Origin: Phallusia mammillata
Lineage: Eukaryota
Assembly (NCBI GenBank): GCA_965637545.1
Contig: OZ281497.1
Location: forward strand, 28,520,001-28,584,000
Reading direction: 5' to 3'
DNA: 64,000 nucleotides
Part shown: positions 15,001 to 55,761 of the stretch, piece by piece
How the letters are laid out: every line of letters starts with the position of its first letter
Numbering within the stretch: position 1 is the stretch's first letter
Made by a program: the position numbers and the translations under genes
The notes under the pieces: generated by a model
What the model was told of the DNA's origin: nothing
Databases searched by the model: none
Seen by the model: the letters and a program-made list of their open reading frames with translations, nothing else

Positions 15001-15718
15001 TGGCGTATTGTTCTGTGTTTTCTAAATTGATCGCCTGGACTTGAATCAACACATCTGGCGTGTTGTTCGTTTGTTTGAAATGTAGCTTTCGATTTTACAA
15101 AAAATAATTTTAGTGTTACACCAATTAGCTTGTTTTGTATGAAAAGGTACGCTACTTATAATACAAATAATACAAATCTGGTTTAGGAATTGTGGCACAT
15201 TGACATAGGCTTACTTCTGCAAAGCAATTTATCGTCCAGTATTGGAAGTTATCCAAAAAAAATATTGTCCATTTATCCGAAATGCTTCATTTAATATTTT
15301 TAACTTGTGTTCGTTTTTCAATTCTCATGTATAGTGTGTTAAAGATTTTTGTCGATATCTAACGACGGTCTTTATTGCTTGCTATTGAATCGGTATCAAT
15401 TGGTGTTTTGTTTATACCAGTTTGTGCACTTTTGTATTTAACTTGCACTAACAACTCCATTTGTTTTACATTCAATGTAGGTTATAGGTTTTCATTGATT
15501 TTCAAATAATAATGTTTTAATGATAAGTACTCTGGTCCATAATGAGATTGAAAGCGACATGTTTCATATTTCAAGTTTGTCGGCAAGTCTTTCATCATCA
15601 GTATTGCTGACATTTTAACGCAAGCAGTTACAAACAAACACAACTTGGACGCAATCGTGTGACAATCGCATGTAAATTGCTCAGTCGCATTCATAAACAA
15701 TCCCATTCATCGCAAAGA

Positions 15719-15955
15719 ATGGGTAATCAAGTAGTTAAACTGGATTCGACCCAAGAATCGGATGTTGATGGGCCGGGTTTTATCTTGAACCAAGGACCAG
15801 ATGATGCTGAGCCAGAATCAAGCCCATCCCTAAGACAGGATGCAATTGTTTACCAGCTCAACGCAACCGAAGAACTTAGAGATATGGTGTCCCAGACAAG
15901 TTTACACTACTGTTTGCCAGTTGATGAACAGGACAAGAATTTGGTTTTCAACTTG
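15719..15955 (+). CDS. NLR-1 first coding exon (79 aa; MGNQ start, one QGPDDAEPES unit)
   Basis: Open frame from ATG to TTG|GTAAGA (15956). The N-terminus and QGPDDAEP unit are homologous to the NLR-2 N-terminus at DNA level. Confidence 0.7.
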
Positions 15956-18900
15956 GTAAGACTTTTCACCTGATTCGCCAAGAAGTCGTCGATAGAAATC
16001 CCGAAAGTTTTTAAAGTGTAATTTTTTAAATATCGTCGATATGAAATCAGTACTTCCGCCGCCCACCAACGATTGAAATCGACGACTTCTTGTGGTATCT
16101 GGTGGACTTCTGAAAACCAGAATCCGTTTTGATCTCAAAATTTTCTTTGTGTAGGAAAGCAAACAAGCACCTCAGATTGGAGACACAAACATCCACACAA
16201 CTGGGCCAGTTTACAACGCTCCAATCTATCAACAACATATCACACAACATGTAACAGTGTGTCAAACTGACGAGAAAGCTCACTGCTCGTCTCAGCTTCC
16301 TGCTCCATGCTCTTTAGAAGAAGAAACTTCACCAAAACATCCAGCTACACCTCCTTTGCCCAAACGAACTCACTTTTCAGCTCAACCACCCGTTCAACAC
16401 TACATTAATGAAGAAACTTTACCCAAACTCCCTACAACGTCTATATCGGTAGCACAGAGACAGAGGTTTTCTAAAGATCAAACTTCATTGTTAACAGAGC
16501 ATGACATAAAACATGAATATGTTCAGTCTTCATCAGCACTGATGTTGTTGCTCAAGAAAAAAACACATGAAATTGCAAGTGAAGAATCGTCCCTGGCAGA
16601 TTTTGCCAACCGACCAATACCAACCGTCAACCTTGCCATAGTCAGCAAACCGCGGCAAATTGACAACGAGTTTCGAGCAGAAGGACATTATCGACGTAAA
16701 GAGGAACTTTACAACATACCACAAAGTGACATCACCGGTGAAGAAATGTTTGCTCGTGCAAAACAAACAGCACAAAGGGAAGCTGAATGGAAATTCAAGC
16801 CTAATGAAGTGAATGCAAAAGAAGGTTACGTGGAAAAACATGGAAACGTGGTCGGTGTGGTCGGACAAGCTGGAATAGGAAAGACGACCTCAGCCAAAAA
16901 GTGGGCCATGCAAGGTTTAAGGGAAGAATTGTTCGGAGAGACTTCCTTCTTCTTCTACATAGTGATCAGACACATCGACTTCACCACGGAGATGACACTT
17001 CTTCAGTTTCTTTTTTCCACTATGTCGATAGAACAAGATTACACCCCGGAACAAGAGAAAAGCATTATCAATGCCATTTGCAACGATCCGAATGTTGTGA
17101 TGATTTTCGACGGTTTCGACGAGGCAGCGATTGAGTCATTTTCTGCTGAAGTTCCCCAACCCCTTCTACACTCAAAGTCCAAAGCGGAAAACTATGTGAA
17201 GCATTTGGCGGGAGGAAACTTGCTTCCACGTGCTCGGAAGATTTTCACGTCACGACCCACTCAGCTATACAAGCTCCATCCTTTATATCGACCCAGGTTT
17301 ATTGTTCAAATACTTGGATTGACGCCAACATCACAAGATGAACTTGGACGTAAGATATGTGGAGACGGATACGACGGTGTACACCAAAAGCTAGTGGAAA
17401 ACCGCAATGTATTTGCTTACTGTTATGTTCCTGTCAATTTTATATTGACACTTGTCTACTTGATAAATTACGTAGGAGATATTCAGTTTGTTTCACTCAC
17501 TCGAGTCCTTGCTTTCACTTGTTGCCAATATCTAAAAACCAATCATTTAAGGGGCCAAGAAGCTGAGTTGGACAAACTGGCAAAACTGGCCTATGATGCA
17601 TTTCTGAAGATGGAGATTGTACTTAAAGCAAAAGCGTTTAAAAAAGCTGGTATCAAGGAATCCACAGCCGATGCATTTACAAACACATCGGTCACAAAGC
17701 ATGGGAATCTCAAGCTGACGATATTGGATGGTTACAAAGTTCGATATTTCTCTCATCTCATCTGGCAAGAGTTTTTTTCGGCTTTCTACCTGATGATGAT
17801 CATGTCCCTTGACGAGTTTGAGAAAGTCCTCAAACCACTTACAGATGCCAGATGGGAAGTTGTCTCTAACTTCGTTTTTGGGATTTGCGATTCTTCGGTT
17901 TTCTTACAACTTGAGCCGATTGTTCCAGAATGTTCCATCAGTGATTGGAAGCAAAAAAAATCTTTGCTGGTGAAATTTATGCGGTCTAAACCGAAGCTGA
18001 GCAGAGTAGAAATCGTGCAAATTTGCAGCTGGGCTCATGAGTCAAATGATCCAGAGATTGCTTCGTCAATGGCCTCCCTACTACCTGATGAGCTCGACCT
18101 TCGTGATTCATCTCTCCTTCCAGTTGATTACGAAAATCTTTCCTTCGTGATTCAACAAAGAGCGAAACCGGTAAAACTGTGGTTTTGCTAACTGCGCGTT
18201 AATTGTTGAGAAAAAAAAGCAAAAACGAACAGAGCCTCAACTAAAAACTTAAAAAATATAAATCATTAGAATCAAGACACATCTGTGTCAATCACCACGT
18301 TTGTATCACCACATTCATATCCACAGAACAGTAAAAATCAAAATCTCTATTAACGAAGTTAAAAAAAAACATCACATGCTAATTGTCCAACCATACTGAA
18401 CGCACAAGTAGCGTCAAAATTTTAATTACTTGTGCATTACTCCGACTAAAAGTGGTAGTTACATTCAGTACATAAAAGTTCATGGTCTTCAGTACATGGT
18501 CTTTGCGTATAGCTATACATGTTAAATAAATGTAGGGTTAAATATAAACAAAGGGTGGATGGAAAACAAAGTGAAATGTAAAATTAACCAAATAATAATG
18601 TTAAGTTAGATACACAAAGAGCAAGAACAAACGCAGTTAAATAAATAAAGTGCAAAAATACGTAAGAAATGAAATCTATTAAAAATACAAGCACATCCTA
18701 ATAAAGGAAAACTATGTGTGACGCTAAAAAGGTATATTGCAACTTAATCCAATATGCAAAATCGCTATGTGTGTCGGTTGCCGATTGTTTTGTAGTTTTG
18801 TAGCAAAAATAGCATCGTGTTGCCCATATCTTTGGGTCGTGGTTGCAATGTTTAGCTTAAAATTCGTCCAAATGACAACTTAAAATGTTGAATGCTTGCG

Positions 18901-21900
18901 TTTGCAATTTACAACTGCATAGCCATCCCTGCCCATATGTCATTTCATGCCAATTGTCGTTTTTGTTTTAATTTTTTTTTTGCCTGCAGCTAATATTTGA
19001 CAACATTTTTTCTCATTTTCTAAACAACTTGGATGCATCTTTTTTAGTTATTCAAATTCACTATAATCTCTAACATTAGGTTGTAGCTGACATGGCCCAC
19101 AATAATTTTCTTGCCCGAACAATTAACAAAGCAAATAACTTAAAAACATGCAACTTTTTCTCGCTTGTCAACACAATGCCACCCTACAAACAAATAAGGT
19201 TTAGTGTAAAATTTAATCGTGGAAACAAGACCATGGCGTTAACACGTCGCTCCAAACAATGCAAGTAACTAAAAAAGATTTTTACCTGCACAAACCACGG
19301 TTCAGACCAATGTTGTATACATCATTCAGTTTTAGCTGGATCCAGCTATACAAGCTGAAATCCGAGCCAAACCCGACATTTTAATATTTAAAGTAAAGAA
19401 ATCTCGTTTTTGACAACAATTCAACTTTTTTACCTTGCAACAAGTACATGCTCTTTAAAGCAAAAAGTACAATTTTTTCTATTTTTAAATTGTTGCACAA
19501 GTTGTTCCCAAATTGTGTTTTTGTATGCAGTAACGTGAAAAAAATCATTTCAAAACATGCAAAAAACAATGCTATAATACTCACTATATTGGGTTAAGTT
19601 AGGGTTAAGTTTAACATTCACAACAAGGCGAAATCCAAAGTATTTTAGTTTACTTGAATTTGTCACTACGATAAACGTAATAATATTTGTTGGATTAAAA
19701 TCAGCTGAGGACACTTAACCTTACCGAAAACGAAATCGACAAGATGGAAGCAGCTTCACTCTCCCCTTGCCTTCACAACATGGAAGAACTTATACTGGAG
19801 GGTTGTAAGATCGGAAGCGAAGGGGTCGAGAAACTATGCGAGGGGGTGAAAAGGCTAACAAAGCCGGTAAAACCAAAATTTAAGCATTGCATAAACCGTG
19901 TTAGTAAAACTGCAATTTTTCTTCACAGTTATTTTTGTACTGACAAACTTAGCAAATAGTTGTTGTCCAAGGGCAAAAGATTTTTCAATTTAAGGAAAAT
20001 AATGTCTTGTCTAGTAAATATATATTTGTGACGTCAGAATTGCATTTTGTCTTCACAACTAAAGGGACATATGAATTAACTCAAACAATAAAAGACCTTT
20101 TTGTTCCGTTAATTGTTTGAGTTGGCAATATACAAAAGTCAAGCCATCCTGCCGCACATGTCAGTCCATAAATATTTTTCCTTTCTTTTCCATTCTCACA
20201 GCATGAAGCCTCTATTTTGAGAAATCAGTTTCACAAAGTAGCAGTATGGGTGGATTTGTTTGCAACAATTTCAAAAGTGTACAAGTCTAATTTCAACAAA
20301 CAGGTTGACATTTGACAACAAATTGTCCTCATAACAATGTGCATGTAACGCATTTCACTACACTGGTGGAACTATTTCCAACATATTGTTGTAATTGAAC
20401 CACTTTTTTCAAAAAAATGAACGAAGCAAAACAATAACATTTAAACTTTTAAATATCCTTACAAGCCGATACTGCCCGACATCAATATTTTTAAACAAAC
20501 AACTTTGTCACAGCTTTTTTGTGCATCTAGCGTGACGGACAACAACGCATTGTGAAACAAACGTAATTATTTTACTCATGTGTTGCTATAACACCAAGTC
20601 GCTCGACACATGCACAAGGTCTGATATTAATGTTGTCGGTGAAACACGGCCAGGCGTTAGCACATCATTTTAGCAAAACCTAATATTTACAAATATCAGA
20701 CCCTGCGTTCAAGCAAAGTTGTAAACGGATCTCAAATAGGTCCAGCCGGAAAATAAAATCCAAAATCCTGCCTAAACCCGACATTATGCTAAAATAAAAT
20801 CGTAATTAGGCCAAAACTTAGATTTACTAAAGCCATAAGTACCCTAGTGTCAATTCAGGCCGCCTCTAGCCCGTTTTATTTAAAAAACTGAAACCTAAAC
20901 AAGCACATGACCCGAAAACTTTTTTTTTCTTTTTCTAACTTTTTTTCGTTTCTTTATTTTGAGTTTATTTTTTCTGAGTAAAACAAATTTAAAAATTAAC
21001 AACAAGGCGTAATTCGAACTAAATTTGTCTGTTTTGTTTACTGGCATGATCACTGCGATAAATGTAATTTTATTTGTTGCTTTAAAATCAGCTGAAGATA
21101 CTCGACCTCTCCGACAACGAGATCGGCAACACAGGAGCTGCTTCGCTGGATCCTAGCCTTCACGAAGAACTTATACTGAAAATGTGTGAGATTGAAAGTG
21201 AAGGTGTCAAAAAACTCTGCGATAGAGTAAAAAGGATAACGAAGCCGGTAAAACCTTGTGAAATTTAAAAACACTTACATAAACCTGTATTAGTGAACTG
21301 TTAATTTCCTTTAAAGGTATATTTCTTACTGATAACTGGTAATAATGTCATTTTGTCCAGTAAATATAAAATTGTGACTTAAGAATCTAATTTTGTTCGA
21401 AAAAGACTTTGAATAACCTCGAACAGTGAACGACAAGTGAGAAATTTAAACATTATTTTGTTTCTATTTTTTTTACATATCAGAATGATAACTTGAAAAA
21501 GCATTAAAACATAAACTTGAAAAAGCTCTGAAAGCCCCTAACCCATACAATGATTTTAATATAATCTTTATATTTTACATGAAAGCATGTGTCAAAGTGT
21601 GTATTTTTCTTTTACTCTATATTTCTGTGTTTCAACGACTGTTTGTGTTGCTTTCTTACTTAAATGACTCAGAAACATCGTCTCTGCACCATAAAGCTTC
21701 TAACGCTTTATAACTTAGTTGTTTCCGGCGCTTCCGAACGGATTCTTACAACATTTACGTACAAAGCACTCGAACAACGCTTGCTTCCATCGTTAGTTCT
21801 ACCTTTCTCTCTTTCTCTCTCCCTCTTCTCTCTACATGACTCGGATATGTGGACAACACCGCTTCAATGTTAGATACACAAAGAGGTACAATTGCATTAA

Positions 21901-24900
21901 AATATAGTACACAAACAAAAAAAAATACTGGAAGTCAAAGCACAATCTAGTTATGGGAAACTACGTAAATGCCGTCTTGGTGTGCGATACAATAAGAAAA
22001 TAACAATATTCGTATGCGATCATTACAAGTGACGCAACAGACCAAAGTTTCAATCCAAGAAAGGCCTTTTGGATCGGTTTTAAACATATTTTTTATGTCT
22101 GCAGCAGGGATATAATCGTGTTGTCCATATTTTTGTCTGTTGGTTGCAATTTCAATTGAAATCTATGCGTTTTATTGAAATTTATTCACAAGACTAAATT
22201 TACAAAAATGTCCACTGAATATGAAACTTTCTATTCAACCATTAATATGGCCATGTTTTATTCGAGTAAGTTATAGTCATAGATAAAAATTTTAACAAAA
22301 ACTAAACCAGTTCACAGATTAGTCACACTTGATTTTAACATTATTTCAGTAATGAGGTTTTGTGTGTAGACTTTCAGTTTTTCAACTAATACTTGCTGCT
22401 TTATTTTGTAAAAAAATAGTTAATAGCTAGATCAAAAAATACTATTACAACTCCAGTAAAAACACTACTTTTTTCACTTTTAAGCCATGTGCTTGCCGTG
22501 TGCAACTAAAATGAATCTTAAGGTCAGGACGTAACAAAGAGTTATAAAACTCGTTGCTGCGAAGCGCACAGCCTCGTCGTAGATAACGTTATGGTCCACA
22601 TACAAAAATTAATATTGCCGGTTTACCAAGGCGGAAATCATTCTTTTTATATATTGCTCAACCATAAAAAATTTGTGATGGATGTTATTTGTAATATAAT
22701 AGTACATCAAGTAAAATTATCTAGGGGGTGCTGCAGCCTCGCAGCACCCTAGCACGAGACGCCCCTGCAAGTAAAACAAGCCATTCTACCCCACATGTCA
22801 GTCCATAACAATATTCCGTAGTTTCAGCATGAAGTCTTCACTTTAGGAAACAAGTTTCACTTCGTTACACTAGAAGGAAATTTGTTTGCAGTAAATGTAA
22901 TTAAGACTAGTTTCAACTAAGATTTTTTCTTTATAAATGAACGAAGCAAAACAATAACAAGCAAACTTTATTAAGAAAAAATGCCGATACTGTCACTCAT
23001 ACAGACATCAACATTTTTGAACAATTCCTTTTGGCAGCATTTTTGTATCTAGCACATACGAATACACAAAAATGCGCAGTGAAACAAACGTGCAGCGCAT
23101 ACTTGTTTTGCTCATGTGTTGCTATAATACCAGGTCACCGAGAAACGCACAAGGTCTAATGTTAATGTTATCAGTGAAACAAAGCCAGGCGTTAGAACAT
23201 CATTTGCAAAAAATAACTTTTATATATTTTAAAACCTGGAATCAAGCAAGAGTTGAAAACATGTCTGAAATTAGGTCAACCTGAAAAAAAAAAAAAAACT
23301 TCAGCCTGACTTACAATTCTGGTTCAGGCAATACAGCAACACACACACACCTTTTTTTTCTTTCTTTATGTTGAATTTATTTTTCTGGGTAAAACAATTC
23401 AAACATTTAAAACAAGGCGTAGTCCGAAAGTGTAGTTGTTACTGCAGTAAATGTCATTACATTTGTTGCCTTAAAATTAGCTGAAGATACTCGACCTCTC
23501 CGACAACAAGATCGGCAACACGGGAGCAGCTTCACTCGCTCCTTGCCTTCACAACATGGAACAACTAATATTGCGGAAATGCAACCTTGGAAGTGAAGGC
23601 GTCGAAAACATCTGCGATGGAGTCAAGAGTCTAAAAAAGCCGGTAAAGCATCTTGAAGTTTGAAACTTTCAAAATTTCATCAAATTATTTTTGAACCTTG
23701 TCAATCTGATTTAAGGGTATATTTTATACTGAAAGCTGTTACTTTAAAATAGTTTCGGAAGCTTACGAAAATAATGTCCTTTTGTCTAGCACAAATACAT
23801 GTGTGATGTCATAATTAAATTTTGTCTTCGCTATACAAAGTGTCATTGATGTAGTTCGAATAGTGAACAAACGAGATACGCAAAACATTATGTTGTTCCT
23901 ATTTTACTTGCGTGAAAGAATGATAATTGTATGATGTCATGTAAGATGTCCACGAAAGTTACTAGGTTCGTTTCCATGTACTTGTGTTTGTTAAAATGTC
24001 CGACAGAATCAAACAAAAACGACATATGATTTCAATGGAAGTTTTGCTTCAAACATTTTTTCTTTAAAACGTAAACTAAACAGAAAAACAAATAAGCGTT
24101 TGTTTGCAATGAAATAAAATTGTTTAGTCGGAAAAGTGCGATCAACTAATGTTAAGCTCATGCGCCGACAAAAACTCTGTTTGAAATCATTCAAAATATT
24201 ACATTCATTTTTGTACTAAAATCAAGTCAAGCATTTACCACTAGGCGTAATCTGAAGTTATGCTGTGATATCTTTTTTTATTTACCAGTATTTGTCATAG
24301 CGATAAATGTAATAATGTTTGTTGCATTAAAATCAGCTGACGAGATTCGACCTCTCCCACAACAAAATCGGAGAAACAGGAGCAGCATTACTAGCCCCTT
24401 GCCTTCAAAACACGGAAGAACTTGTTCTGGTTGTATGTGGGATCGGTATTGAAGGAGTAGAGAAACTCTGCGATGGAGTGGAAAAGCTAACAAAGCCGGT
24501 AAAAGACGTATATTATTTTATAAGTGGTTTACAAGATTTTATGTACTTGCAAACGCTACAATCTGTTTATTCAAACCTAATCTTAAATAAAAAAACATGT
24601 TTTTGTTTTAGTAAACCTGTAATATGTTAAGCTTGTAAATGTTCGTTATAGGTATTTTTGTACTGACAACAAGTACTTTGAAATAGTTATCTTGGTCGCG
24701 ATCGATTTTTAAATGTTAGGTTATGCTAGTCACGAAAATATACCGTTGTTGCATCACAATTCAAATTTGTCGTCACAATAAAATAAGTTCATTATTTCTT
24801 TGCAATAATAAACACTAAAAACAACATAATATGTAAAAGACACAGTCATCATGTTGTCATATAAATTTGCATGGTGTGGTAATTAGTATTAACAAAAACA

Positions 24901-27318
24901 CTGAACGCTTTATGCAAGCACATAAGGAATAATCACCAATTTACAAAAAACAGTTTTGAAAATAGGTTCGGTACATTCATTTAAAAGCGAAAAAAACCTG
25001 TTAATTTTTTTACCTGTTTATATGAAACGACACATCGGTGACAAACTGTGCAAAAATCTTTGACCCCCCACCCAAAACGCCGTGATTTGTATTTGTCTCA
25101 ACAATGTAACCTTGAAAAGGCAGGGTTCTGTTTATTGCCTGAATTTTCTTTTTGTCTTGTCGTACGTAGGTGCTGACTTAGTTTCCGCAATTAGGTCTCG
25201 TAGTATACCCACAGTGTCAGTTAATAACATTTAATTGACTCCTGCAGTCTGCAAGCTATTAACTTCTCATCAAGTTTTTAAAGCATTGTACCACATAAAG
25301 CCATGAACTATGCAAGCAATGCATATGTTTGGTACAGTTTACCTGATTTTTTTTTAATTTACAACATTTCAACAACAGGGTTATGTAAATTTGTGAAATC
25401 CATGCACTTGTGCTGGTCACAATGTCTGCACAGGGCGCATCCCGGGCACTGATACATAAATTTTGCTGCCGATTTATTAGTTCCAAATTTTGCGTCTTTT
25501 CTGTTTTATTCTTACTAAATAAAATCACACTTTGCTGGATAAGGCAGACTCACTCCATAAGAGAGTTGGACAATTTGTCTGCGGACAACATACGTCACTT
25601 CACACAACGCAGTTAACTAATGAAAGAAGTGTAACATTCAGGTGGGAATGTTATAGGTAAATGCGCTACTGCAGGGGTGGCCAACCTTCTACATACCATT
25701 CGCCAACTTTTTAACATACTGTGTTGGATGCGCCATAAATGTCTCGTAACCCCACCTTCTATGACTACTTCTTGTATATAGAGAGAAAAAGAAAGAAACA
25801 ACTTTTGCATGAGAAGGATAGTAATAAGAAATAAGAACTATTAAGTAAAAAATAACCGTAAAACCGTACAGAATATCTAAATTACCCCTTTGACATCCAT
25901 ATACCCCTAATCTAAATAAAATCGTCAAAAATATCCAAAAAACAAAAAGGAAGTGCGTCCCAGTTGCATGAAAGGGTTAAATTTCGAAAATACCTGCAAA
26001 TGTTCACAAACGAAAGACAATGCACAACGCACCAGGTAGGGCTACTAACACCATAACGAGAATCAGAACTTCGCTTTCACAAGGAGGCGTAAAGAGCTGA
26101 ATTTTCATTTAGGGGCTATAAATGGGTTGGGTTGGGAAATATCTACATAGAATTTTTACATTAGCAACTAATTTTTGGATTAATTTTATTGAATTTTATA
26201 TGCTAATACCTTACCCCGACCCTGAGCAATTTTGGAGATATAACCAATCAAATTTGGGGGCAGATTCTCGTTATGGTGTTAGTAGCTCTACCAACGCACC
26301 AACCGGAACGAGCCGCAGTTGCAAACTGACAAAAAATTCACCGTCAAGGATCGCCAGGTGCGGCCCATTTTTATTCATCACAACACTTCTTCTTCAGGCT
26401 AGTGAGCGATAGCGAGCTGATTAATTTGATTTTCATGATTATCAAAAGAAGGCTATGCGTCCTTTCTAATCATGCAATGCGCCACGTTTAGTGCATGCGC
26501 CATAGGTTGGCCACCACTGCGCTACAGCATGGGTGCACAACCTTTGAGCTATGACGGCGCATCACAGGTTCATACTTTACCAGCAGCCGCCAAGTGTGTT
26601 TATGCTTTCGTTTATATATTACTGATCCAAAGAAACAGGAATTATCTTATAATATCGAATCAACTAATTGCAAAAAAGGGGTCTAATAATGTTTAAACTG
26701 TTGTGACTTGAGATTAAAACATACAAGACAGATTAAAACACAAAGTTCTGAGACCGAAAATGCGCATTTACCTAGTTATTTATTTATTTATAAAGTGATT
26801 GTTGAAATATTAAAAGCGTATGATTTTTTATACACGGACACCAATTATATGCGTTCTAACTCAAATAATTTAAAACATGGTACTTAATAGATCGTAATAA
26901 GCTTTTTTTGGTAAATTTCGTGTGATTACAAACAATCGGAGCAGATCTGCAAAACCAGTAGTTGTTGGCGTATTGGTTTTATCTGGATCGTTAATTATTA
27001 TGTCTAGGTTTCCTCAGAAATATTTCTTTTACTTTACATCACGTGACATCTGTTTTTCGTGTGAAAAATGGTATTATGGCGTCACACTGTTTTGATTCGA
27101 TTTGCAACCAAGTCTTGTCACTTGCTTTTGACTACTTCTTGTTTCAGATGGAATTTCTGGATTTATCTTGGAACGAGCTGACAGATGAATGTGCTGAGTT
27201 ATTGGCACGATGTGTCCACAACATCAATGAGATGAATGTTTGGCCCAATAACTTCACAGAAGCAGGCAAGAACCTCATCAGATCAAAGTCGCAAGGAAAA
27301 GTTGTGTTTAAATACTAA
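15719..27318 (+). CDS. NLR-1: multi-exon NACHT-LRR (NOD-like receptor) gene, 1021 aa, join(15719..15955,16155..18170,19705..19866,21092..21247,23481..23642,24337..24498,27148..27318)
   Basis: ATG at 15719 (MGNQVVK). All six introns are GT-AG, phase 0 and keep the frame open to TAA 27316-27318. NACHT motifs: Walker A GQAGIGKTT, Walker B VMIFDGFDE, FTSRP, FSHLIWQEFF. These are followed by RI-like LRR exons. Confidence 0.88.
15979..16092. repeat. Perfect 15-bp inverted repeat inside NLR-1 intron 1
   Basis: CAAGAAGTCGTCGAT (15979-15993) / ATCGACGACTTCTTG (16078-16092). Confidence 0.9.
16155..18170 (+). CDS. NLR-1 NACHT exon (672 aa)
   Basis: Acceptor ttttctttgtgtag|GAA is in frame with ORF 16257..18191. 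Donor CCG|GTAAAA at 18171. Complete P-loop NACHT motif set. Confidence 0.93.
19705..19866 (+). CDS. NLR-1 LRR cassette exon 1 (54 aa)
   Basis: aaaatcag|CTG...CCG|gtaaaa; LRTLNLTENEIDKMEAASLSPCLHNMEELILEGCKIGSEGVEKLCEGVKRLTKP. Confidence 0.9.
21092..21247 (+). CDS. NLR-1 LRR cassette exon 2 (52 aa, in-frame 6-bp deletion)
   Basis: aaaatcag|CTG...CCG|gtaaaa; LKILDLSDNEIGNTGAASLDPSLHEELILKMCEIESEGVKKLCDRVKRITKP. Confidence 0.88.
23481..23642 (+). CDS. NLR-1 LRR cassette exon 3 (54 aa)
   Basis: aaaattag|CTG...CCG|gtaaag; LKILDLSDNKIGNTGAASLAPCLHNMEQLILRKCNLGSEGVENICDGVKSLKKP. Confidence 0.9.
24337..24498 (+). CDS. NLR-1 LRR cassette exon 4 (54 aa)
   Basis: aaaatcag|CTG...CCG|gtaaaa; LTRFDLSHNKIGETGAALLAPCLQNTEELVLVVCGIGIEGVEKLCDGVEKLTKP. 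Confidence 0.9.
25672..26519 (+). mobile_element. Non-autonomous hAT (Buster/Charlie-like) element in the last NLR-1 intron
   Basis: TIRs CAGGGGTGGCCAACC / GGTTGGCCACCACTG; 8-bp TSD CGCTACTG / CGCTACAG (7/8). Confidence 0.8.
27148..27318 (+). CDS. NLR-1 terminal LRR/cap exon (56 aa + stop)
   Basis: Pyrimidine-rich acceptor ttcttgtttcag|ATG; MEFLDLSWNELTDECAELLARCVHNINEMNVWPNNFTEAGKNLIRSKSQGKVVFKY*; paralogous to 55597..55761. Confidence 0.88.
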   Translation: MEFLDLSWNELTDECAELLARCVHNINEMNVWPNNFTEAGKNLIRSKSQGKVVFKY

Positions 27319-27381
27319 AGTAATATCTGAACATTTGTTTGCATAAAAATCGCAAAAAAACTTATGTGGAACAAGTTTTAC

Positions 27382-27387
27382 AATAAA
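27382..27387 (+). terminator. Candidate polyadenylation signal of NLR-1
   Basis: AATAAA about 64 nt after the stop codon; not conserved at the equivalent NLR-2 position. Confidence 0.3.
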
Positions 27388-29177
27388 TACAGTGAATCAA
27401 TGTGACACTATTTCATCATTAATGGCGGCATTGGTCACTGCCTGAACGTCCGATGGAAAAAGTCTCTTGTCTACTCTCTGTGTCAATATATTTCACGATT
27501 ATTAATTTTCATGTTTGTTTGAAACATTATTATTTGCAATTAACACTGACAAGCACATGCACCGAACATCAGTGAGTATTTTGCATCAACCTAAAAAAAA
27601 CTCATGTTTTGTGTCAAACCGATTTTATGCATAACCTGATGGAAAACCCGCACTGCATTTGGCTTGCTGAAGAAATTGTAATCTTATACATAATTGTCAA
27701 TGTTGTGATATGTTGTTCCACCATTTAATTCTGCACATTATTTTTACGTCGATTTTATTGCTTTGTATTAACGTCGTTTATAGCGGTTTGCTTTTGTGTT
27801 TTTTCCTGCAAAATGACGAATTTAGTGCCCCTTCAGTTTCTTGCTTCAATATCGTGAAGTAAATTTTGACGTCACGAACTCTGCTTTTAAATCCACATCG
27901 GTTGAATACCCTAACGCTACGAAAATAAATGAGATATCTGACCAATTTTTACTTGGAAATAAATGTTTCTATGCTTATCTTATTTGAATTCTGCGACTTA
28001 GAACTAAATATTGCATTATTGAGATGTTTTTGTTGCAAATGCCTGATAGATTATTCAGATGTATATAAACGTATAAACACCGGTAAAACAAAAGTTACCA
28101 TTCTTATCACTTGTGTTCTGCAAACGCCAGTGTTGTTAAATATTGTGTTTTTTTCTGCTTCTGTTGTTCGCCATGCTTTTTTTACTGACGTCACTGAGAT
28201 AAAACTTTAAACCCAACTTACCGGTCTGAGACCCAAACCATGAGACGTGTTTCCAACTTTTCAATATGTGACACGTTAAAAAAACAATTTTTTAACTTAC
28301 ATCGGATTTTGTATTTAAAATTCGGAATTATTCAAACATCTCGCAAGCAATCCAGCGGCGTCTCTATCGTTAATTTTGTTTAATTGTTTTTTGACAAATT
28401 AAGTCGCTTGTATATATAATGAGTGTCCTCTGCTTTTCGTAGCCTTTCTGTATTGTATATATGTGCATATTGTGTTGAACTGTTTCCTTTATTCCGTTTT
28501 TTATTTTATTTATCTAATGTTTCCTGCGTCCCTGCTGACCTATTTAGCAAGGGACACCACCCTACTTTGTACACTATACTGTCGTAACTCTCCGCTTGAA
28601 GTGTTTATCTGCACAACCTAAATTAATTGTGAACATCGTTATTAGCCCTTATAATTTATGCCATTTTTGGTTCCTGACTGTTTTTGTAACACTGTTAATC
28701 AATGGAGACGACATGATAATTTGTTTTATCCGCCGGTGGTCACTTGCTAAGGCGGGGAGGGGGCCACGCAAATAAAAAAGACGTTATTCTAATCATTAGA
28801 ATCTAATGCATATTTTTTGTGACATTTCGACAAAACAGTCATCAGGAAACATGTGACCCAAGCAGTAACGACTTGATAAACAACAAATATAGAAATATCA
28901 GATTGTGCAATACTAATAGGCCAAACCAACAGTTGTGTGTATGGCGGGTTCAACAACAATCGGTTCAGGGCCGCGAGAAACAAGTTTTGTGTTAATGGTG
29001 TTACACAGCTCGACGATATTTTTCAAATCAGAGCGAGTTGGAAGGTTCAGTAGGCGGCATAAATCTGGAATATCCAGGCAAAAAAGAATTTTTTTTAAGC
29101 CGAAGTATTTTCTTTGTAAATTAAAAGTTTTTTAACTGTTAACACGTCAACTAGTAGATCACACTTTTGAAGAATTA

Positions 29178-48769: not shown

Positions 48770-51166
48770 ATGGGCAATAACGCATCTAAAAAACATTCAT
48801 CCCGAAAAAGGGAGGAACAAGTAGCCAAGTCCAACAAGTCCCGAAGACCTGAAATCCAACCAAGCTTGTACCGAAGATTAAGCAACGCTGAATCCCAATC
48901 CAACTTGTTCCAAGGACCAAATAATGCTGAACAACCCGGCTTGTCACAAGGAAAAGGTGATGTTAAATCCCAACCTGGTTTGCCACAGGGACAAGGTGAT
49001 GCCAAACCCACATCCAGTTTGATACAAGGACCAGATTATGCTAAACCCCAACCCGGTTTGATCCACCAACCAAATGATGCTGGACCCCAATCAGGTTTGT
49101 TACAAGGACAAGGTGATGCCAAACCCACATCCAAGTTAATACAAGGACCAGATAATGCTGAACCCCAATCCGGCTTGACGCAAAGACCAAATGATGCTAA
49201 ACCCCAACCTGGCTTGCCACAAGGACAAGGTGATGTTAAACCCCAACCTGGCTTGCCACAGGGACAAGGTGATGCCAAACCCACATCCAGGTTGATACAA
49301 GCACCAGATAATGCTGATCCCCAACCCGGCTTGACCCAAGGACCAAATGATGCTAAACCCGAACCTACATTGGCCAAAGGATCACAAAGTACCATATTGC
49401 CTCCAAAGGCCACGAATTTAAATTGGCATGGTGACACACATATCTGGACACAAGGGCCAGTTATAGTGGATGTAACAACAAAGGAAACAAACGAAACACA
49501 TGAAGATGTTCAGTTTGTTGAAGATCTAATATCGTTGCTTAAAAAACATGTGGAAGCCATCGCTGGTGCAGAATCGTCTCTAGCAGATGTTGCCAAACGG
49601 AAAATAACACCAGTCAACCTTGCCATAGTCAGCAAACCACAACTAATTAACGACGAGTTTCAAGCAGAGGGGCATTATTGCCACAGAAAGGAACTTGTCA
49701 ACGTTTACAACATACCAACAGGTGACATAACCTATGAAGAAATGTTTGATGAGGCAAAAGATACAGCAGAAAAAGAAGCGGAAACAAAATTCTACCGGAA
49801 TGAAGAAAAGGCAAAACACGATTACGCGGAAAAACATGGAAACGTGGTCGGTGTGGTTGGACAAGCTGGAATAGGAAAGACGACCTCAGCAAAAACGTGG
49901 GCCAGGCAAGGTCTAAGGGGAGAGTTGTTCGGAGAGACTTCCTTCTTCTTTTACATTGTGATTAGGCACATCGACTTCACAAGAGAGATGACACTCCTTC
50001 AGTTTCTTCTCTTCACTATGGCGATAGAACAAGAATATACTTTAAAACAAGAAAAAGGCATTCTCAAAGCCGTTTGCAATGATCCAAACGTTGTGATGAT
50101 TTTTGACGGTTTTGACGAGGCACGTTTTAAATCTTTTTCCACAGAAGTTCCCCAGCCCCTACCACATTTCAAATCTAAAGCGGAAAACTACCTGAAGCAT
50201 TTAGTGGGAGGAAACTTGCTTCCACGTGCTCGGAAGATTTTTACGTCACGTCCTGCTCAACTATACAAACTCCATCCTTCATATAGACCAAGGTTTATTG
50301 TTCAAATACTTGGATTGACTCCAACATCACAAGATGAACTTGGACGTCAGATATGTGGAGACAAATACGAAGATGTACACCAACAACTTGAGCAAAACCG
50401 CAATGCATTTGCATACTGCTACGTTCCTGTCAATTTTATTTTGACACTTGTTTACTTGGTAAATTACAATGGAGATATTCAGTTTGTTTCACTCACTCGA
50501 GTCCTTGCTTTCACTTGTGGCCAATATCTCACAACCAATCATTTAAGGGGCCAAGAAGGTGAGTTGGACAAACTGGCGAAGTTGGCCTATGATGCATTTC
50601 TAAACATGGAGATCGTATTCAAAGCAATGGCATTCGTGAAAGCAGGCATCAAGGAATCTACAGCCGATGCATTTACAAACACGTCAGTCACAAAGCACGG
50701 GAATCTCAAGCTGACGATATTGGATGGTCACAAAGTTCGATATTTTTCTCATCTCATTTGGCAGGAGTTTTTTGTGGCTTTCTACCTGATGATGATCATC
50801 TCTCTAGACGAGTTTGAGGAAATCCTCAAACATTTTGTAGACGACAGATGGGAAGTAGTTTCTAAATTTGTTTTCGGGATTTGCGATCCTTCAGTTTTCC
50901 ATCAACTCGAGACTCTTGTTCCTGAGAGTTCTCCTAAGGATTGGAAGGAGAAGAAATCTTTGCTTATAAAGTTTATCCAGCATAAACCAAAGCTCAGTAA
51001 AGAAGAAATCTTACGAGATTGCAGCTGGGCTCATGAGTCAAATGACCTGGAAACTGCTTCATCTGTGGCCTCCCTACTTCCTGATGAGCTAGACCTTAGT
51101 AGATCATCTCTCCTTCCAGCTGACTTTGAGGGTCTTTCCTTCGTGATTCAACACAAAGAGACATCG
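48770..51166 (+). CDS. NLR-2 N-terminus + NACHT exon (799 aa)
   Basis: Uninterrupted ORF; GQAGIGKTT, VMIFDGFDE, FTSRP, FSHLIWQEFF; closely similar to NLR-1 across the NACHT. Confidence 0.95.
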
Positions 51167-54100
51167 GTAATGCTGTGATTTGTAATCAGCACTTTAGATT
51201 ACTGAGAAATATTTCCAAATATTTTTTTGGGATTCTATCTGCTCATTGTTAATTATTTGCCGCCAATTGATCAACATGTTTTGATAACGTCAATTTGTAC
51301 TAATATAATAAAAGGCACAACTGCGGAACTTCAACGTTCGCCTACAGCACCACAGCTATTCTATATCACTATAAACGTCACGAGGCCCAAAATCCCCAAT
51401 AAGGCAAGAAGTCAAAAAACTTCACATGACTTCAGTCCAATTATTTCCGACCATGTATACCCCCTATAATAATAGGAAACTATTTGATTAGCATGGGTAT
51501 ACAGAAAGTGACAATGTTGGTACACCATCATCACTAATGACGCAAGAGACCAAGAAGTTGTAGTCCAACTTGATCCAATGTGCTATAACGTCATGTGCAT
51601 CGGTAGCATGACGTACAATAACACAAAGTGACTCAAGTGTTGAGGGCGTACTTGTTTTACTGGAGTGTTGCTATAACAGGGCTCAACGCGTGTACAAGGT
51701 TCGACGTAAAGTTTATTTTTTACGCAAGTTCAAGCCGTTTTCACTTCATGACAAACAACACACTGCAAAAACTTGCAAAATAGTTTTTTAACCTAAAGCT
51801 AGCAAATATTCATTCTGACTAGAGTTGAAAACGAACTTGTCGAACCCGAAAGTAAGAAACCAAAACGCGCTTCTAACTCTTTTTTGTCACATAAAAATCT
51901 GTGTAAAGTCAGACCTGAATCTAGCCTGTTTTGAAGTCGGAACCCGAGCTCGGCCCACAACGCCCAACGCGACTTACATCGCTGCAGTGGCATGTTTTGC
52001 TTTAACAAGCGCTTTGGCCCTTATTCTTTGGTAATAAATAATGCAAGACATTAAAGCAAACTCATGTTGCCCAATAGCTTCCGGCAATTTGTTTGTACTA
52101 TGTAGCGTGTACTGCTGTTGTTTGATATTACCGAAATAGCTTTTGACGATTTGTCAAATTGTTTTTCATAATCGACCAATAGCAAGAGGCAGTATGCACA
52201 CAAAAAAACAGATATCAATTAATTCTTTCATTGCAATTAATCCTCACCTGTGTGACATAATAATAATAATAAAACAAACGATAAAATTATTTAGATTTTT
52301 TTCACCAATATGATACACTTTATTTTGCACTCATAACAGATAAATGATTCTAGGTAATTTTAGTAACATTTACAACAAGTCGTAATCCAAAGTTGTGCTG
52401 TCTATTTTTATTGACCTAAATTTTCCCGACGGTAAATGTGATGTTTTTTTATTGCAATAAAACTAGTTAAAGAAACTCGACCTCTCCGGCAACAAAATCG
52501 GTAACATGGAAGCAACTTCACTGGCTCCTTGTCTTTCTAACATGGAAGAGCTTGTTCTGAATGAGTGTTGTTTCGGAAATGAAGGCATCAAGAAACTCTT
52601 CGATGGAGAGAAAATCCTAACAAAGCCGGTAAAAACTTATACATTGACCACAATTTAACTTTCTCTCTTGCAAAGAGTAGATCCCTCATGAATGAATGTT
52701 ATTGTACGCTTTTTATGTTTTCTAAATAGCTTTTCTTGCTGCAATCAATGTGATCTTTTTCGTTTTATAAAAACCAGCTGAAGAGACTCGACCTCTCCGA
52801 TAATAAGATAGGCAACACAGGAGCAGCTGGCCCCTTGCCTTCCCAACTTCGAAGAACTTATTCTGTGGAAGTGTGAGATCGAAAGTGAAGGCGTCGAGAA
52901 ACTTTGTGATGGAGTGATGAAGCTATCAAAGCCGGTAAAAACTCATATTTTTGAGGATATTGAAATACATGTGAGCATGTCATTATTGTTGCTCGTCAAA
53001 TTAGGATCTTCTTCAGATGGCGGTAACAGGTCAAAAAATGTTTTCCAAATGTTTATGTCTATCTAACTTGCAAAATAATACTCGACATTTTGTGCACATT
53101 CATGACCAACGTATAATAACCAAACATGTATTTTTCATAACCAACCGCAGAACTAATCATGCTGCACATGTAAATTCGTGACATTTTTTTCTGTTTTAAT
53201 TTTTCATAACTTACGTTTAACTACATGAGAGATGTGAACAGTTTGTTTACCACAACGTGCTACTAAAAATCATTTATGCCGCTGGATATTAATATATTAA
53301 ATACAATTCATTTTTAAACGACCCTGCCCAGACTTAAAATTCGATTAACTTACAACATTAGACTTTTTTTGTTCGATATCATTACACTATGTTGCAAATA
53401 TGGTTGTATTTCGGGAATCGAACCACACCTTTTGTCGCAGAAAATGAACAAAGCAAAAAATGAGTGTGTATAATAAAATAAATATAACTTTCGTAGAAGG
53501 CGACGCTGTTGCTCAACACGTCCATTTGTTGTAACAAAAAATATTGTACAGCAGATTTTGCATCTAGCATGACTTCAACAACACTTACCGAAAAAAACGC
53601 ACACGTACTCCTTTCACTCCTGTATTGCAAAACAGTCTCGATGCACGTAGAGGCTTTGATGTAAAATAAATCATAAAGGCATTCCCAGGTCTGTCCAAGT
53701 AATCCAATAAACTAAAATTCTATAGGTAGCATAGAATAAAAAAATATAGGTAGCATTTGGGTTAATTTGATTCATTTATTTGAAAAAATACGTTAACAAA
53801 AAAGTTTGGAGCTTAGTTCACTTTTTTCCAAACTTTTGTTGCTACCTTAAACGTGAAACTTTTTTCGCATTAAAATCAGCTGAAGAGACTAGACCTCTCC
53901 TGGAGCAAGATAGGCAACACAGGAGCAGTTTCACTTACTCGTTGCCTTCCTTACATCGAAGAGCTTATACTGGAGAATTGTGCGAACGTAAGTGAGGTCG
54001 TCGACAAACTATGCGATGGAGTGAAGAAGCTAACAAAACCGGTAAAAACAAATTTATGTTTTTTTAAGGAAATGTTGCAATTATTTGAGCATGTTAGTAA

Positions 54101-55761
54101 TGTTGCTCATGAAATAAAGAACAGTTTAGATGGCGCTATCAGAATTAAAATGTGTTTTCCATATGTTTCTGTCTAACTTAGTTGCAAAATTTCGCTTAAA
54201 CTTGTGTGCAAATTTATAACCAACTTACAATGTCCTACGCCAGTAGTTTTGGTGCGTCGTTCAATTTTTCTTTTTTTAAGGGCGTCGCATAATAGTTTCG
54301 TTTGGTGGCTGAACTCAGTAACACTTTCAATGCGGTTGACGCATATCTACGTCCAAAGCCGTTTTGCGTAGAGTGCAGATTGACGTAAATTAACGTCAAA
54401 AGTTTTTGATCAAAATTGGGACTGCCCGTTAATGTACGTCACGCGTAATCAGCTTTAGAATGAATGAGGTGCGTGATAGGTGGGTCTCTGGGGCGACACT
54501 TGGTGAGCATTAAACTTGGTTTTAAATTCCCCTTGGACTTTTATTCGCTGGGGCGTCGCAAGTCCAGAAAACTTTTCCAAAGGCGACGCAACAAAAAAAG
54601 TTTGAGAACCACTGTCCTATACATATGAACTTATGCTGCGCAACACATTATTTTTCATTCTTCCTTTAAAAAGTATCAATTTTCCAAATAATACAGGTTT
54701 CACTACATGAACTGTGTAGATGATTTGTTTACAATAAATATGTTACGCAAAACGAGACATCTTAGCCACTGAAGATTAATATCTTAAAACACATCCAACC
54801 CCTAACAAAACCTTTACAATTTTTTGACACCGTTACTATTCGATGTACTTAACAACATTTTGTGTTTGTGTCAGTAGATTCAACACTATTTTTAACAAAA
54901 CCTTGTAATTGCTCTAATTTAACTACACTAATTTTATTGTCTCAAAAAATGGAAAAAGTAGAAGACAACATGTGAAATCCGTAGAAGGCGATACTGTCGC
55001 TCATTTAATACGATTTAAATTAAAACATATTTTATTATATTTTAGTTTAGCAAGGAGTACAACAACGCGTAGTGAAACAAACTTGCTGCGCATATTTGTT
55101 TAAATTGTAGGTAGGTGTAACTCAAGGTCGCCCGAAGCACATCAAAAGTTTGATCTAAATTCCACCACAAGGTCAGGGCTTTCCCAAGTCAATTTTGCAA
55201 AACAGTTTTGTTAAAACAACAACAAAAAATCCTGCCTGGCTAATCAATTCTTCTTTTATATTTGTTTGTTTTTGGATTGCTTATGAACAAAACAAGCGGA
55301 CATACGGATCTGCAATTGTTATATTTATATATATATATATATATATCCGTTAGGCAAAAGGCTGGTTATGCAAGGAACAAGCCGGTTATGAAACAATTCC
55401 TTCTTCCAAATGTTTATGTGTTAATTTTTGAAGAAATGTTAAATATTGTCAAAGATCTCTTTTTACACTTTGAGACACATAACATGACTCTATTTTAGCA
55501 TAAATGATTGAAGTGTTTGCATAATGTAATACTTTAAATTTTTTATGTTTTGCAACAACTCTTGTTAGTTGTTTTTTTTTACTTATTCTTGTTTAGATGG
55601 AACTTCTTGATCTCTCTTTTAACGACCTGACACATGAAAGTACAAAGTCATTGGCATCATGTGTCCACAACATCAAAGTCTTAGAGGTTGAACTCAATAA
55701 ATTCACAGAAGCAGAGAAGAATCTCATCAGATCAAAGTCGCGAGGAAAAGTTGTGTTATAA
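48770..55761 (+). CDS. NLR-2: multi-exon NACHT-LRR gene, 961 aa if exon 52778..52934 is skipped; join(48770..51166,52467..52628,53880..54041,55597..55761)
   Basis: ATG 48770 (MGNNASK); 802-codon ORF with the same NACHT motifs as NLR-1; donor TCG|GTAATG at 51167; phase-0 LRR exons; TAA 55759-55761. Confidence 0.85.
48911..49375 (+). repeat. Coding minisatellite: 12 units of about 39 bp (13 aa; QG[PQ][NDG]DA[KE]P[QT][PS]GL[PIT])
   Basis: Units read directly: QGPNNAEQPGLS, QGKGDVKSQPGLP, QGQGDAKPTSSLI, QGPDYAKPQPGLI, HQPNDAGPQSGLL, QGQGDAKPTSKLI, QGPDNAEPQSGLT, QRPNDAKPQPGLP, QGQGDVKPQPGLP, QGQGDAKPTSRLI, QAPDNADPQPGLT, QGPNDAKPEPTLA. Confidence 0.95.
52467..52628 (+). CDS. NLR-2 LRR cassette exon A (54 aa)
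   Basis: aaaactag|TTA...CCG|gtaaaa; LKKLDLSGNKIGNMEATSLAPCLSNMEELVLNECCFGNEGIKKLFDGEKILTKP. Confidence 0.88.
52778..52934 (+). pseudogene. NLR-2 LRR cassette exon B, frameshifted (157 bp; 5-bp deletion)
   Basis: Splice sites intact (aaaaccag|CTG, CCG|gtaaaa), but CTTCA is missing after 52826 relative to sister exons. Inclusion gives TGA at 52874-52876. Confidence 0.88.
53880..54041 (+). CDS. NLR-2 LRR cassette exon C (54 aa)
   Basis: aaaatcag|CTG...CCG|gtaaaa; LKRLDLSWSKIGNTGAVSLTRCLPYIEELILENCANVSEVVDKLCDGVKKLTKP. Confidence 0.88.
54241..54614 (+). mobile_element. hAT-type MITE, degenerate left end
   Basis: Right TIR GTTTGAGAACCACTG; left CAGTAGTTTT; TSD TCCTACGC / TCCTATAC (6/8). Confidence 0.6.
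55326..55346. repeat. (TA)n microsatellite
   Basis: Direct reading of a TA run. Confidence 0.9.
55597..55761 (+). CDS. NLR-2 terminal LRR/cap exon (54 aa + stop)
   Basis: ttattcttgtttag|ATG; MELLDLSFNDLTHESTKSLASCVHNIKVLEVELNKFTEAEKNLIRSKSRGKVVL*. Confidence 0.88.
   Translation: MELLDLSFNDLTHESTKSLASCVHNIKVLEVELNKFTEAEKNLIRSKSRGKVVL

What the first reader, a model, noticed from the sequence alone, without database searches (positions are those of the whole stretch)
18171..27318. NLR sensor built from interchangeable phase-0 162-bp LRR cassettes with uniformly weak splice sites
Seen: all 7 internal LRR exons (4 in NLR-1, 3 in NLR-2) are phase 0/0 two-repeat units, 54 aa in five of them. All have purine-rich acceptors with no adjacent pyrimidine tract (AAAATCAG, AAAATTAG, AAAACTAG, AAAACCAG) and GTAAAA/GTAAAG donors. 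Terminal exons have strong pyrimidine-rich acceptors. Flanking intron stretches are duplicated with the exons (e.g. 20140-20980 vs 22770-23420). Known: NLR LRRs expand by exon duplication in several animals. Inference: any subset of cassettes can be skipped in frame, giving up to 16 LRR combinations from NLR-1, and cassettes can be gained or lost by unequal crossing-over. This would be a combinatorial innate receptor system.
Basis: partly seen in the sequence, partly recalled or inferred. Interest (0 to 1): 0.75.

Follow-up and report, generated by a model that had tools for sequence, protein, structure and literature searches.

The report
Sea-squirt NLR with modular LRR exons
Two neighbouring sea-squirt immune-sensor (NLR) genes build their repeat domain from near-identical 162-base exons, a layout already described for human and fish NLRs; nothing here shows that the exons are mixed and matched to make many receptors.

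Summary
NLR-1 has four internal LRR exons of 162, 156, 162 and 162 bp, all phase 0. NLR-2 has three, but its middle one is 157 bp: a 5-nt deletion breaks the frame and gives a stop if it is included. All seven share an A-rich acceptor (AAAAYYAG) and a GTAAAA/GTAAAG donor. These flanks are more conserved (85-95%) than third codon positions (63%). Two cassette pairs, E2/E3 and B/C, are tandem duplicates that include intron sequence.

The layout is not new. Strict frame-preserving LRR exon modularity, and skipping of one LRR exon, were published for human NLRs (Hoss 2019, PMC6642158). A distant sea squirt, Clavelina, has 162-bp phase-0 LRR exons with different, more T-rich acceptors and GTG/GTA donors.

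RNA contigs came only from paralogues. They confirm the exon borders and show cassettes joined one after another, but say nothing about isoforms of this gene. The NACHT exon of NLR-1, whose donor must be used to attach any LRR exon, carries the same GTAAAA donor, so that donor does not by itself imply skipping. A search for Dscam-like docking sites was negative.

Verdict: an ordinary modular NLR from a large family. Combinatorial splicing is untested and the splice sites were not shown to be weak. This scan has not noted the feature on other DNA.

The parts
15719..15955 (+). NLR-1 coding exon 1 (ATG at 15719, 79 codons, donor GTAAGA)
   Evidence: Read from the sequence. The junction to exon 2 matches the Phallusia cDNA protein P0001.
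16155..18170 (+). NLR-1 large exon: N-terminal linker, NACHT, winged helix, HD2 and first LRR. It ends in phase 0 with donor GTAAAA.
   Evidence: Pfam NACHT 6.1e-17 plus weak, sub-threshold hits to NOD2_WH and NLRC4_HD2. Walker A GQAGIGKTT and Walker B IFDGFDEA are visible.
19705..19866 (+). NLR-1 LRR cassette E1, 162 nt, 54 aa, phase 0/0
   Evidence: LRR_6 1e-07
21092..21247 (+). NLR-1 LRR cassette E2, 156 nt, 52 aa, phase 0/0
   Evidence: LRR_6 1.8e-09
23481..23642 (+). NLR-1 LRR cassette E3, 162 nt. It is the tandem duplicate of E2. Its acceptor is used at this exact position in RNA contigs of paralogues.
24337..24498 (+). NLR-1 LRR cassette E4, 162 nt. Its donor position is used in RNA contigs of paralogues.
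27148..27318 (+). NLR-1 terminal exon (LRR cap, stop TAA 27316-27318), with a pyrimidine-rich acceptor
20140..21091 (+). Intron upstream of E2, homologous to 22777-23480 upstream of E3 (68-72% identity)
22777..23480 (+). Intron upstream of E3, the duplicate of 20140-21091
48770..51166 (+). NLR-2 large exon (NACHT); its core is 78% identical in protein to NLR-1; donor GTAATG
52467..52628 (+). NLR-2 cassette A, 162 nt, phase 0/0
52778..52934 (+). NLR-2 cassette B, 157 nt. A 5-nt deletion breaks the frame and gives a stop if the exon is included. Its splice motifs are intact, and only 149 nt of intron separate it from A.
53880..54041 (+). NLR-2 cassette C, 162 nt. It is the tandem duplicate of B; 52718-53117 matches 53824-54231 at 74%.
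55597..55761 (+). NLR-2 terminal exon (stop 55759-55761)
19620..19639 (+). Conserved 20-nt intronic element (consensus ACAACAAGGCGTAATCCAAA) 72-100 nt upstream of five cassettes. Other copies are at 20999, 23409, 24237 and 52372.
   Evidence: 4 matches at up to 3 mismatches, 0.01 expected by chance

Best explanation
The interval is the LRR-coding half of an ordinary NACHT-LRR (NLR) gene. It is one of a tandem pair and belongs to a large lineage-specific NLR family of an ascidian, probably Phallusia mammillata or a close relative. As in vertebrate NLRs and ribonuclease inhibitor, one big exon encodes the NACHT module. The ribonuclease-inhibitor-type LRR domain is encoded by short exons that each hold exactly two repeats (27+27 aa, 162 nt), begin and end at the same point of the repeat, and are in phase 0.

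The cassettes multiply by tandem duplication of exon plus intron (E2/E3 and B/C) and decay (B). Repeat number and surface residues therefore vary in the germline between paralogues. The shared A-rich acceptor and GTAAAR donor were inherited from the founding cassette of this subfamily and are kept by purifying selection as working splice signals.

Shown: gene structure, domain identity, duplications, conservation of the flanks, use of the same exon borders in RNA of paralogues, and the great age of the 162-bp layout. Inferred: that the four NLR-1 cassettes are normally all included, and that receptor diversity comes mainly from many genes rather than from many isoforms.
For: - Pfam finds NACHT on both large exons and LRR_6 on the cassettes.
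- Tandem duplicates include intron sequence.
- Cassette dS is 0.37-0.94 and dN/dS 0.2-0.56. The NACHT exons have dS 0.46 and dN/dS 0.29.
- Flank identity is 85% at -10..-1 and 95% at +1..+6, against 63% at third codon positions and about 33% further out.
- 7 of 12 flank positions outside GT/AG are invariant, against 11 of 54 third positions (p=0.013).
- A DNA run of the same genome laid 443 contigs on the 6 kb laid (18521-24520), 364 of them only 90-99% alike, with depth piled on the cassettes. Three probable RNA runs hold contigs that start exactly at the E3 acceptor, preceded by a NACHT-exon end or a cassette end, and contigs joining an E4-like donor to an E3-like acceptor.
- The Clavelina NLR has LRR exons of 162, 162 and 165 nt in phase 0.
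- Relatives L002 and L003 have the same exon border with canonical sites.
- The same architecture is published for human NLRs (PMC6642158) and for zebrafish NLRs (PMC4852459).
Against: - No transcript of NLR-1 or NLR-2 itself was recovered, so constitutive inclusion is an assumption.
- The A-tract at -8..-5 and the AAA at +3..+5 are invariant in all seven cassettes. They differ from the other acceptors and donors of the same genes and from relatives' cassettes, which leaves room for a dedicated splicing signal.
- NLR-2 can only make a full-length protein if cassette B is skipped.
Confidence: 0.75

Rival explanations
1. Regulated or stochastic cassette skipping: the conserved A-rich splice flanks make each cassette an optional exon, so one gene yields several LRR lengths. 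The model is human NLRP3 full-length versus delta-exon 5, extended here to many combinations.
For: - All four NLR-1 cassettes are frame-preserving and start at the same repeat position.
- The flanks are conserved above third codon positions.
- Cassette acceptors have less pyrimidine at -12..-3 (0.4-0.6) than the three non-cassette acceptors (0.8-0.9).
- NLR-2 needs B to be skipped to stay in frame.
- There is a precedent in human NLRs (PMC6642158).
Against: - No skipping junction was seen. The RNA junctions seen at exon borders were cassette-to-next-cassette or NACHT-to-cassette, in paralogues.
- The same GTAAAA donor ends the NACHT exon of NLR-1.
- The seven cassettes are not independent samples, because they descend from one cassette.
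- No genome baseline for splice-site strength was available.
- Clavelina isoforms do not differ in the LRRs.
Confidence: 0.2
2. NLR-2 is a decaying gene (a pseudogene, or a target of nonsense-mediated decay) rather than a working second sensor. Cassette B is a dead exon that is still spliced in.
For: B is 157 nt and carries an in-frame stop, with intact AG and GT signals. The terminal exons of the two genes differ with dN/dS about 1.1.
Against: The 799-codon NACHT exon of NLR-2 is open and evolves under constraint (dN/dS 0.29 against NLR-1). Cassettes A and C are intact. The 5-nt deletion could not be checked against reads, so an assembly error or an allele is possible.
Confidence: 0.35
3. Dscam-like competing RNA pairing: the conserved element upstream of each cassette acts as a selector that pairs with one docking site and so picks cassettes.
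For: A 20-nt element recurs 72-100 nt upstream of five of the seven cassettes.
Against: The best site in the pre-mRNA that can pair with all four NLR-1 elements (-14.2 kcal/mol for the weakest of the four) is no better than for shuffled elements (-11.1 to -17.1). No reverse-complement match was found within 3 mismatches. A hairpin predicted at the acceptor has no covariation and inconsistent z-scores.
Confidence: 0.02

Closest known systems
Human NLRP genes (NLRP3): modular 171-bp LRR exons and the delta-exon 5 isoform (Hoss et al. 2019, PMC6642158)
   Same: One large NACHT exon is followed by short exons that each encode two ribonuclease-inhibitor-type LRRs. The exon border always falls at the same point of the repeat. 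The exons are strictly frame-preserving, so skipping keeps the fold. The authors proposed this as a source of functional diversity.
   Different: The cassette is 162 nt (27+27 aa) rather than 171 nt (28+29 aa). There is no pyrin or other death-fold domain. The cassettes share an unusual A-rich acceptor and a GTAAAR donor. Skipping has not been observed here.
Zebrafish NLR-B30.2 family (Howe et al. 2016, PMC4852459)
   Same: A large lineage-specific NLR expansion in which the largest exon holds the NACHT module and the LRRs lie on separate single exons. The family is shaped by gene amplification, exon shuffling and gene conversion.
   Different: This gene has no Fisna or B30.2 domain. It comes from a different animal lineage and has a different cassette length.
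Clavelina lepadiformis 'NLRP3-like' gene (XP_076803658 and isoforms)
   Same: LRR exons of 162, 162 and 165 nt in phase 0, with the border at the same repeat position. The NACHT exon is 36% identical in protein.
   Different: The acceptors are T-rich (for example TTTTATTGCAG) and the donors are GTGAGT, GTGCGT or GTACCT. The introns are about 70-160 nt. The three annotated isoforms differ only at the N-terminus.
Ribonuclease inhibitor (RNH1)
   Same: The same LRR class (alternating A/B repeats, Pfam LRR_6) and, from general knowledge, one exon per pair of repeats. Hoss et al. used its crystal structure to model the NLRP3 LRR.
   Different: RNH1 has no NACHT module and is a single-copy gene with a fixed repeat number.

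Membership tests
NLR (NACHT-LRR) proteins | Central NACHT NTPase domain with Walker A and Walker B motifs | tested here: met
   Pfam PF05729 scores 6.1e-17 (NLR-1) and 2.7e-16 (NLR-2), both above the curated cut-off. GQAGIGKTT and IFDGFDEA are visible.
NLR (NACHT-LRR) proteins | C-terminal leucine-rich repeats of the ribonuclease-inhibitor type | tested here: met
   Pfam LRR_6 scores above its cut-off on E1-E4 and A (1.9e-10 to 2.6e-06). C and the terminal exons score below the cut-off.
NLRP / NLRC subfamilies | N-terminal pyrin or CARD death-fold domain | tested here: not met
   Pfam found no such domain in the large exons. Exon 1 was not scanned separately. The genes are therefore not filed as NLRP or NLRC.
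Modular LRR-exon architecture of NLRs (Hoss 2019) | Short exons of uniform length, each encoding a whole number of LRRs, with the border at the same repeat position | tested here: met
   Five cassettes of 162 nt, one of 156 nt and one of 157 nt. All begin at L of LxxLDLS and end at KP.
Modular LRR-exon architecture of NLRs (Hoss 2019) | LRR exons strictly frame-preserving | tested here: met
   Six of seven are frame-preserving. NLR-2 cassette B (157 nt) is a frame-breaking derivative with a 5-nt deletion.
Alternatively spliced LRR domain (NLRP3 delta-exon 5 type) | Transcripts that lack one or more LRR exons | tested here: inconclusive
   Contigs of three probable RNA runs matched only as paralogues (90-95% identity). 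At exon borders they show consecutive junctions only. Only 18521-24520 could be laid, in the single call allowed.
Dscam-type choice of exons by competing RNA pairing | A selector sequence before each variable exon that is complementary to a shared docking site | tested here: not met
   Duplex scan of 15700-27400 against shuffled controls. No reverse-complement match was found.
Lamprey VLR-type somatic LRR assembly | LRR cassettes outside an incomplete gene, copied in at the DNA level and not spliced | tested here: not met
   The cassettes lie inside the gene between GT and AG. The same borders are joined in RNA contigs of paralogues.

The most novel reading that the evidence does not exclude
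The invariant A-tract before the acceptor, the GTAAAR donor and the conserved element about 90 nt upstream together form a cassette-specific splicing code in this expanded ascidian NLR subfamily. That code lets individual cells include different subsets of LRR cassettes, so each of many NLR genes yields several receptors. This would be somatic, RNA-level diversification of an innate sensor family.
Probability: 0.08. Interest if true: 0.75.

Novelty: new member of a known kind. Interest (0 to 1): 0.3.

Why it matters
If the cassettes really were combined at will, an invertebrate chordate would be diversifying cytosolic immune sensors at the RNA level. That would bear on how animals without antibodies widen recognition. 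As it stands, the locus adds three smaller points:
- The two-repeat, frame-preserving LRR exon of NLRs is old within tunicates (162 nt in two distant sea squirts), which parallels the 171-nt exon of vertebrate NLRPs.
- It gives a clear example of cassette birth (two tandem duplications that include intron sequence) and cassette death (a 5-nt deletion).
- NLR-2 is a ready-made test case, because it can only stay in frame if one cassette is skipped.

Tried and rejected
- **Transcripts of this gene.** The run search with the NACHT exon found no run on record as RNA. Four probable RNA runs held 7% of the words. Laying three of them gave only paralogue contigs.
- **Isoforms in a relative.** The Clavelina isoforms differ only at the N-terminus.
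- **Dscam-like docking site.** Not better than shuffled controls.
- **Hairpin hiding the T-rich tract at the acceptor.** It is predicted in some cassettes, but there is no covariation, 148 of 500 shuffles pair as well, and z-scores run from +1.05 to -2.84.
- **Splice-site baseline from other genes in the window.** Ten further ORFs gave no Pfam family above its curated cut-off. Papers found on tunicate splicing gave no ascidian matrices.
- **Positive selection on whole cassettes.** dN/dS is 0.2-0.56, so there is none at this resolution.
- **Reading the 'goes back' joint (24497 to 23480) as a circular RNA of this gene.** The contigs are only about 90% identical, so they come from paralogues with a different cassette order.
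- The joined (spliced) protein model was not searched or folded; exons were searched one by one by reference.

Full report
**What is there.** The window comes from an ascidian. The best protein match of the large exon is a Phallusia mammillata cDNA product (COS1.5, 68% identity). Further hits are other tunicate NLRs, then fish and reptile NLRC3/NLRP-like proteins. Earlier notes of this scan name the genome as Phallusia mammillata; I did not verify this beyond that hit.

Two NACHT-LRR genes lie in tandem on the + strand.
- NLR-1 has coding exon 1 at 15719-15955, a large exon at 16155-18170, four short exons, and a terminal exon at 27148-27318.
- NLR-2 has a large exon at 48770-51166, three short exons, and a terminal exon at 55597-55761.
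- Pfam finds NACHT on both large exons (6e-17 and 3e-16), plus weak, sub-threshold hits to the NOD2 winged helix (NLR-1 only) and to NLRC4 HD2 (both).
- Pfam finds LRR_6 on the short exons.
- The NACHT cores are 78% identical in protein.

**Check of the observation.** The NLR-1 cassettes are E1 19705-19866 (162 nt), E2 21092-21247 (156), E3 23481-23642 (162) and E4 24337-24498 (162). All are phase 0/0 and encode 54, 52, 54 and 54 aa. The NLR-2 cassettes are A 52467-52628 (162), B 52778-52934 (157) and C 53880-54041 (162).

It has lost 5 nt relative to the others. Read in phase 0 it hits a stop at codon 33 and throws C and the terminal exon out of frame.

The motifs are as stated: acceptors AAAATCAG (four cassettes), AAAATTAG, AAAACTAG and AAAACCAG; donors GTAAAA (six) and GTAAAG (one). 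Pyrimidine content at -12..-3 is 0.4-0.6 for the cassettes and 0.8-0.9 for NLR-1 exon 2 and the two terminal exons. A short T-rich stretch lies further upstream, at about -19..-13.

A second such pair exists in NLR-2: 52718-53117 matches 53824-54231 at 74%.

**Are the shared splice motifs more than inheritance?** In an alignment of the seven cassettes with their flanks, mean pairwise identity by region is as follows:

| Region | Mean pairwise identity |
|---|---|
| Exon | 74% |
| Third codon positions | 63% |
| -10..-1 (acceptor flank) | 85% |
| +1..+6 (donor flank) | 95% |
| -50..-11 | 62-64% |
| Further upstream and from +7 on | about 30-50% (upstream), 32-36% (downstream) |

Outside the GT and AG themselves, 7 of 12 flank positions are invariant in all seven cassettes, against 11 of 54 third positions (one-sided Fisher p=0.013). 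The A-tract at -8..-5 and the AAA at +3..+5 therefore look selected, not merely young. That shows the sites matter. It does not show that they are weak.

Two facts argue against reading them as skipping signals. First, the NACHT exon of NLR-1 has the same GTAAAA donor, and that donor must be used to attach any LRR exon at all. Second, the cassettes descend from one founder, so seven similar sites are not seven independent observations.

**How old is the layout?** A Clavelina lepadiformis NLR (36% identical NACHT exon) has LRR exons of 162, 162 and 165 nt. All are in phase 0 with the border at the same place in the repeat. Their splice sites differ: more T-rich acceptors, and GTGAGT, GTGCGT or GTACCT donors. 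Two other relatives show the same border with TTTGCTTTAG/GTAAGG and TGTTGTGCCAG/GTATTT. The 162-nt two-repeat cassette is therefore old in tunicates, and the A-rich signature is a trait of this subfamily.

**Evolution of the cassettes.** Pairwise dS among cassettes is 0.37-0.94 and dN/dS is 0.20-0.56. The NACHT exons of the two genes have dS 0.46 and dN/dS 0.29. The closest pairs are B-C (dS 0.37) and E2-E3 (0.51), the two pairs that also share intron sequence. Each gene therefore gained a cassette by tandem duplication at about the time the genes separated, or after. Amino-acid variation is highest at positions 3 and 8 and at positions 31-32 and 34 around the cysteine of the second repeat, with less at 35-37. 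These are the usual exposed positions of an LRR strand (my reading from general knowledge of LRR structure).

**RNA and DNA reads.** No run on record as RNA holds the NACHT exon. Four probable RNA runs hold 7% of its words and two probable DNA runs hold 28-39%. I laid three of the former and one of the latter on 18521-24520, which covers all four cassettes within the 6000-letter limit.
- The DNA run tiles the stretch with contigs that have no differences, so it is probably the source animal or a very close one. It also lays 364 further contigs that are only 90-99% alike, with depth piled on the cassettes. This fits a large family of similar cassettes. The tool warns that depth is not copy number.
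- The listed cassette contigs of the probable RNA runs carry 3-7 differences in 55-85 letters, so they come from paralogues.
- Those contigs are still informative. Many begin exactly at the E3 acceptor and are preceded by the end of a NACHT exon or the end of another cassette. Nine contigs in three runs join an E4-like donor to an E3-like acceptor. The predicted borders are therefore used, and the family is probably expressed.
- Joints in mid-exon (for example 19797 to 21184) lack GT..AG ends, and near-identical ones (19797 to 21185; 23566 to 24460) occur in the DNA run, so they most likely reflect paralogous cassettes rather than splicing.
- Nothing in these data speaks to isoforms of NLR-1.

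**Other ideas tested.** A 20-nt element (consensus ACAACAAGGCGTAATCCAAA) lies 72-100 nt upstream of five cassettes. It gives 4 matches at up to 3 mismatches where 0.01 are expected by chance. I asked whether it could be a Dscam-style selector. The best site in the pre-mRNA that pairs with all four NLR-1 copies is no better than for shuffled elements. A hairpin that would pair the T-rich tract before the acceptor is predicted in some cassettes but has no covariation and inconsistent z-scores. Both ideas are dropped, and the element remains unexplained.

**Comparison with what is known.** Hoss et al. 2019 (PMC6642158) reported the following for human NLRs:
- Every NLRP3 LRR exon is 171 bp and encodes two repeats.
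- The border always sits at the same place in the repeat.
- LRR exons are strictly frame-preserving while other exons are not.
- Human NLRP3 exists as a full-length form and a delta-exon 5 form.
- The authors draw the parallel with the lamprey LRR-based receptors.

Howe et al. 2016 (PMC4852459) describe the same gene plan in the zebrafish NLR expansion.

**Verdict.** The locus is a new member of a known kind. Its mildly interesting points are the conserved A-rich splice flanks, the unexplained upstream element, and NLR-2, which needs one cassette skipped to stay in frame.

**Steps not taken.** I could not lay reads on the NACHT donor, the terminal exon or NLR-2.

Noticed in passing
window 52778-52934: NLR-2 cassette B is 157 nt because of a 5-nt deletion and has an in-frame stop, yet it keeps intact AG and GT signals. 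It lies only 149 nt after cassette A; the other introns around the cassettes are 694-2649 nt. NLR-2 is in frame only if B is skipped.
   Followed up: partly
window 19620-19639, 20999-21018, 23409-23428, 24237-24256, 52372-52391: A conserved 20-nt intronic element lies 72-100 nt upstream of five of the seven cassettes. It is absent before B and C. No complementary partner was found, and its function is unknown.
   Followed up: partly
window 22721-22920: A short palindromic stretch (about 22721-22765) lies in a bin whose summed contig depth in the DNA run is about 750 times that of single-copy bins. It is probably a high-copy small repeat in the E2-E3 intron.
   Followed up: no
window 26035-26064 and 26263-26292: A 30-nt inverted repeat (97% identity) flanks about 200 nt in the last intron of NLR-1. 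It may be a small foldback or MITE-like insertion.
   Followed up: no
protein P0001 (Phallusia mammillata COS1.5, cDNA-derived): The closest known relative's protein ends inside the region that matches the large exon, just after KPKLS, and has no LRRs. It is either an LRR-less isoform or paralogue, or a truncated clone.
   Followed up: no
window 27148-27315 versus 55597-55758: The terminal exons of the two genes differ with dN/dS about 1.1 (54 codons). This is much higher than for the NACHT exons (0.29).
   Followed up: no
window 15719-15955 and 16155-16260: NLR-1 has no recognisable death-fold domain. It starts MGNQ... and carries the short motif GDTNIHTTGPVYNAP, shared with Phallusia COS1.5. 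NLR-2 has a diverged copy (GDTHIWTQGPV).
   Followed up: no
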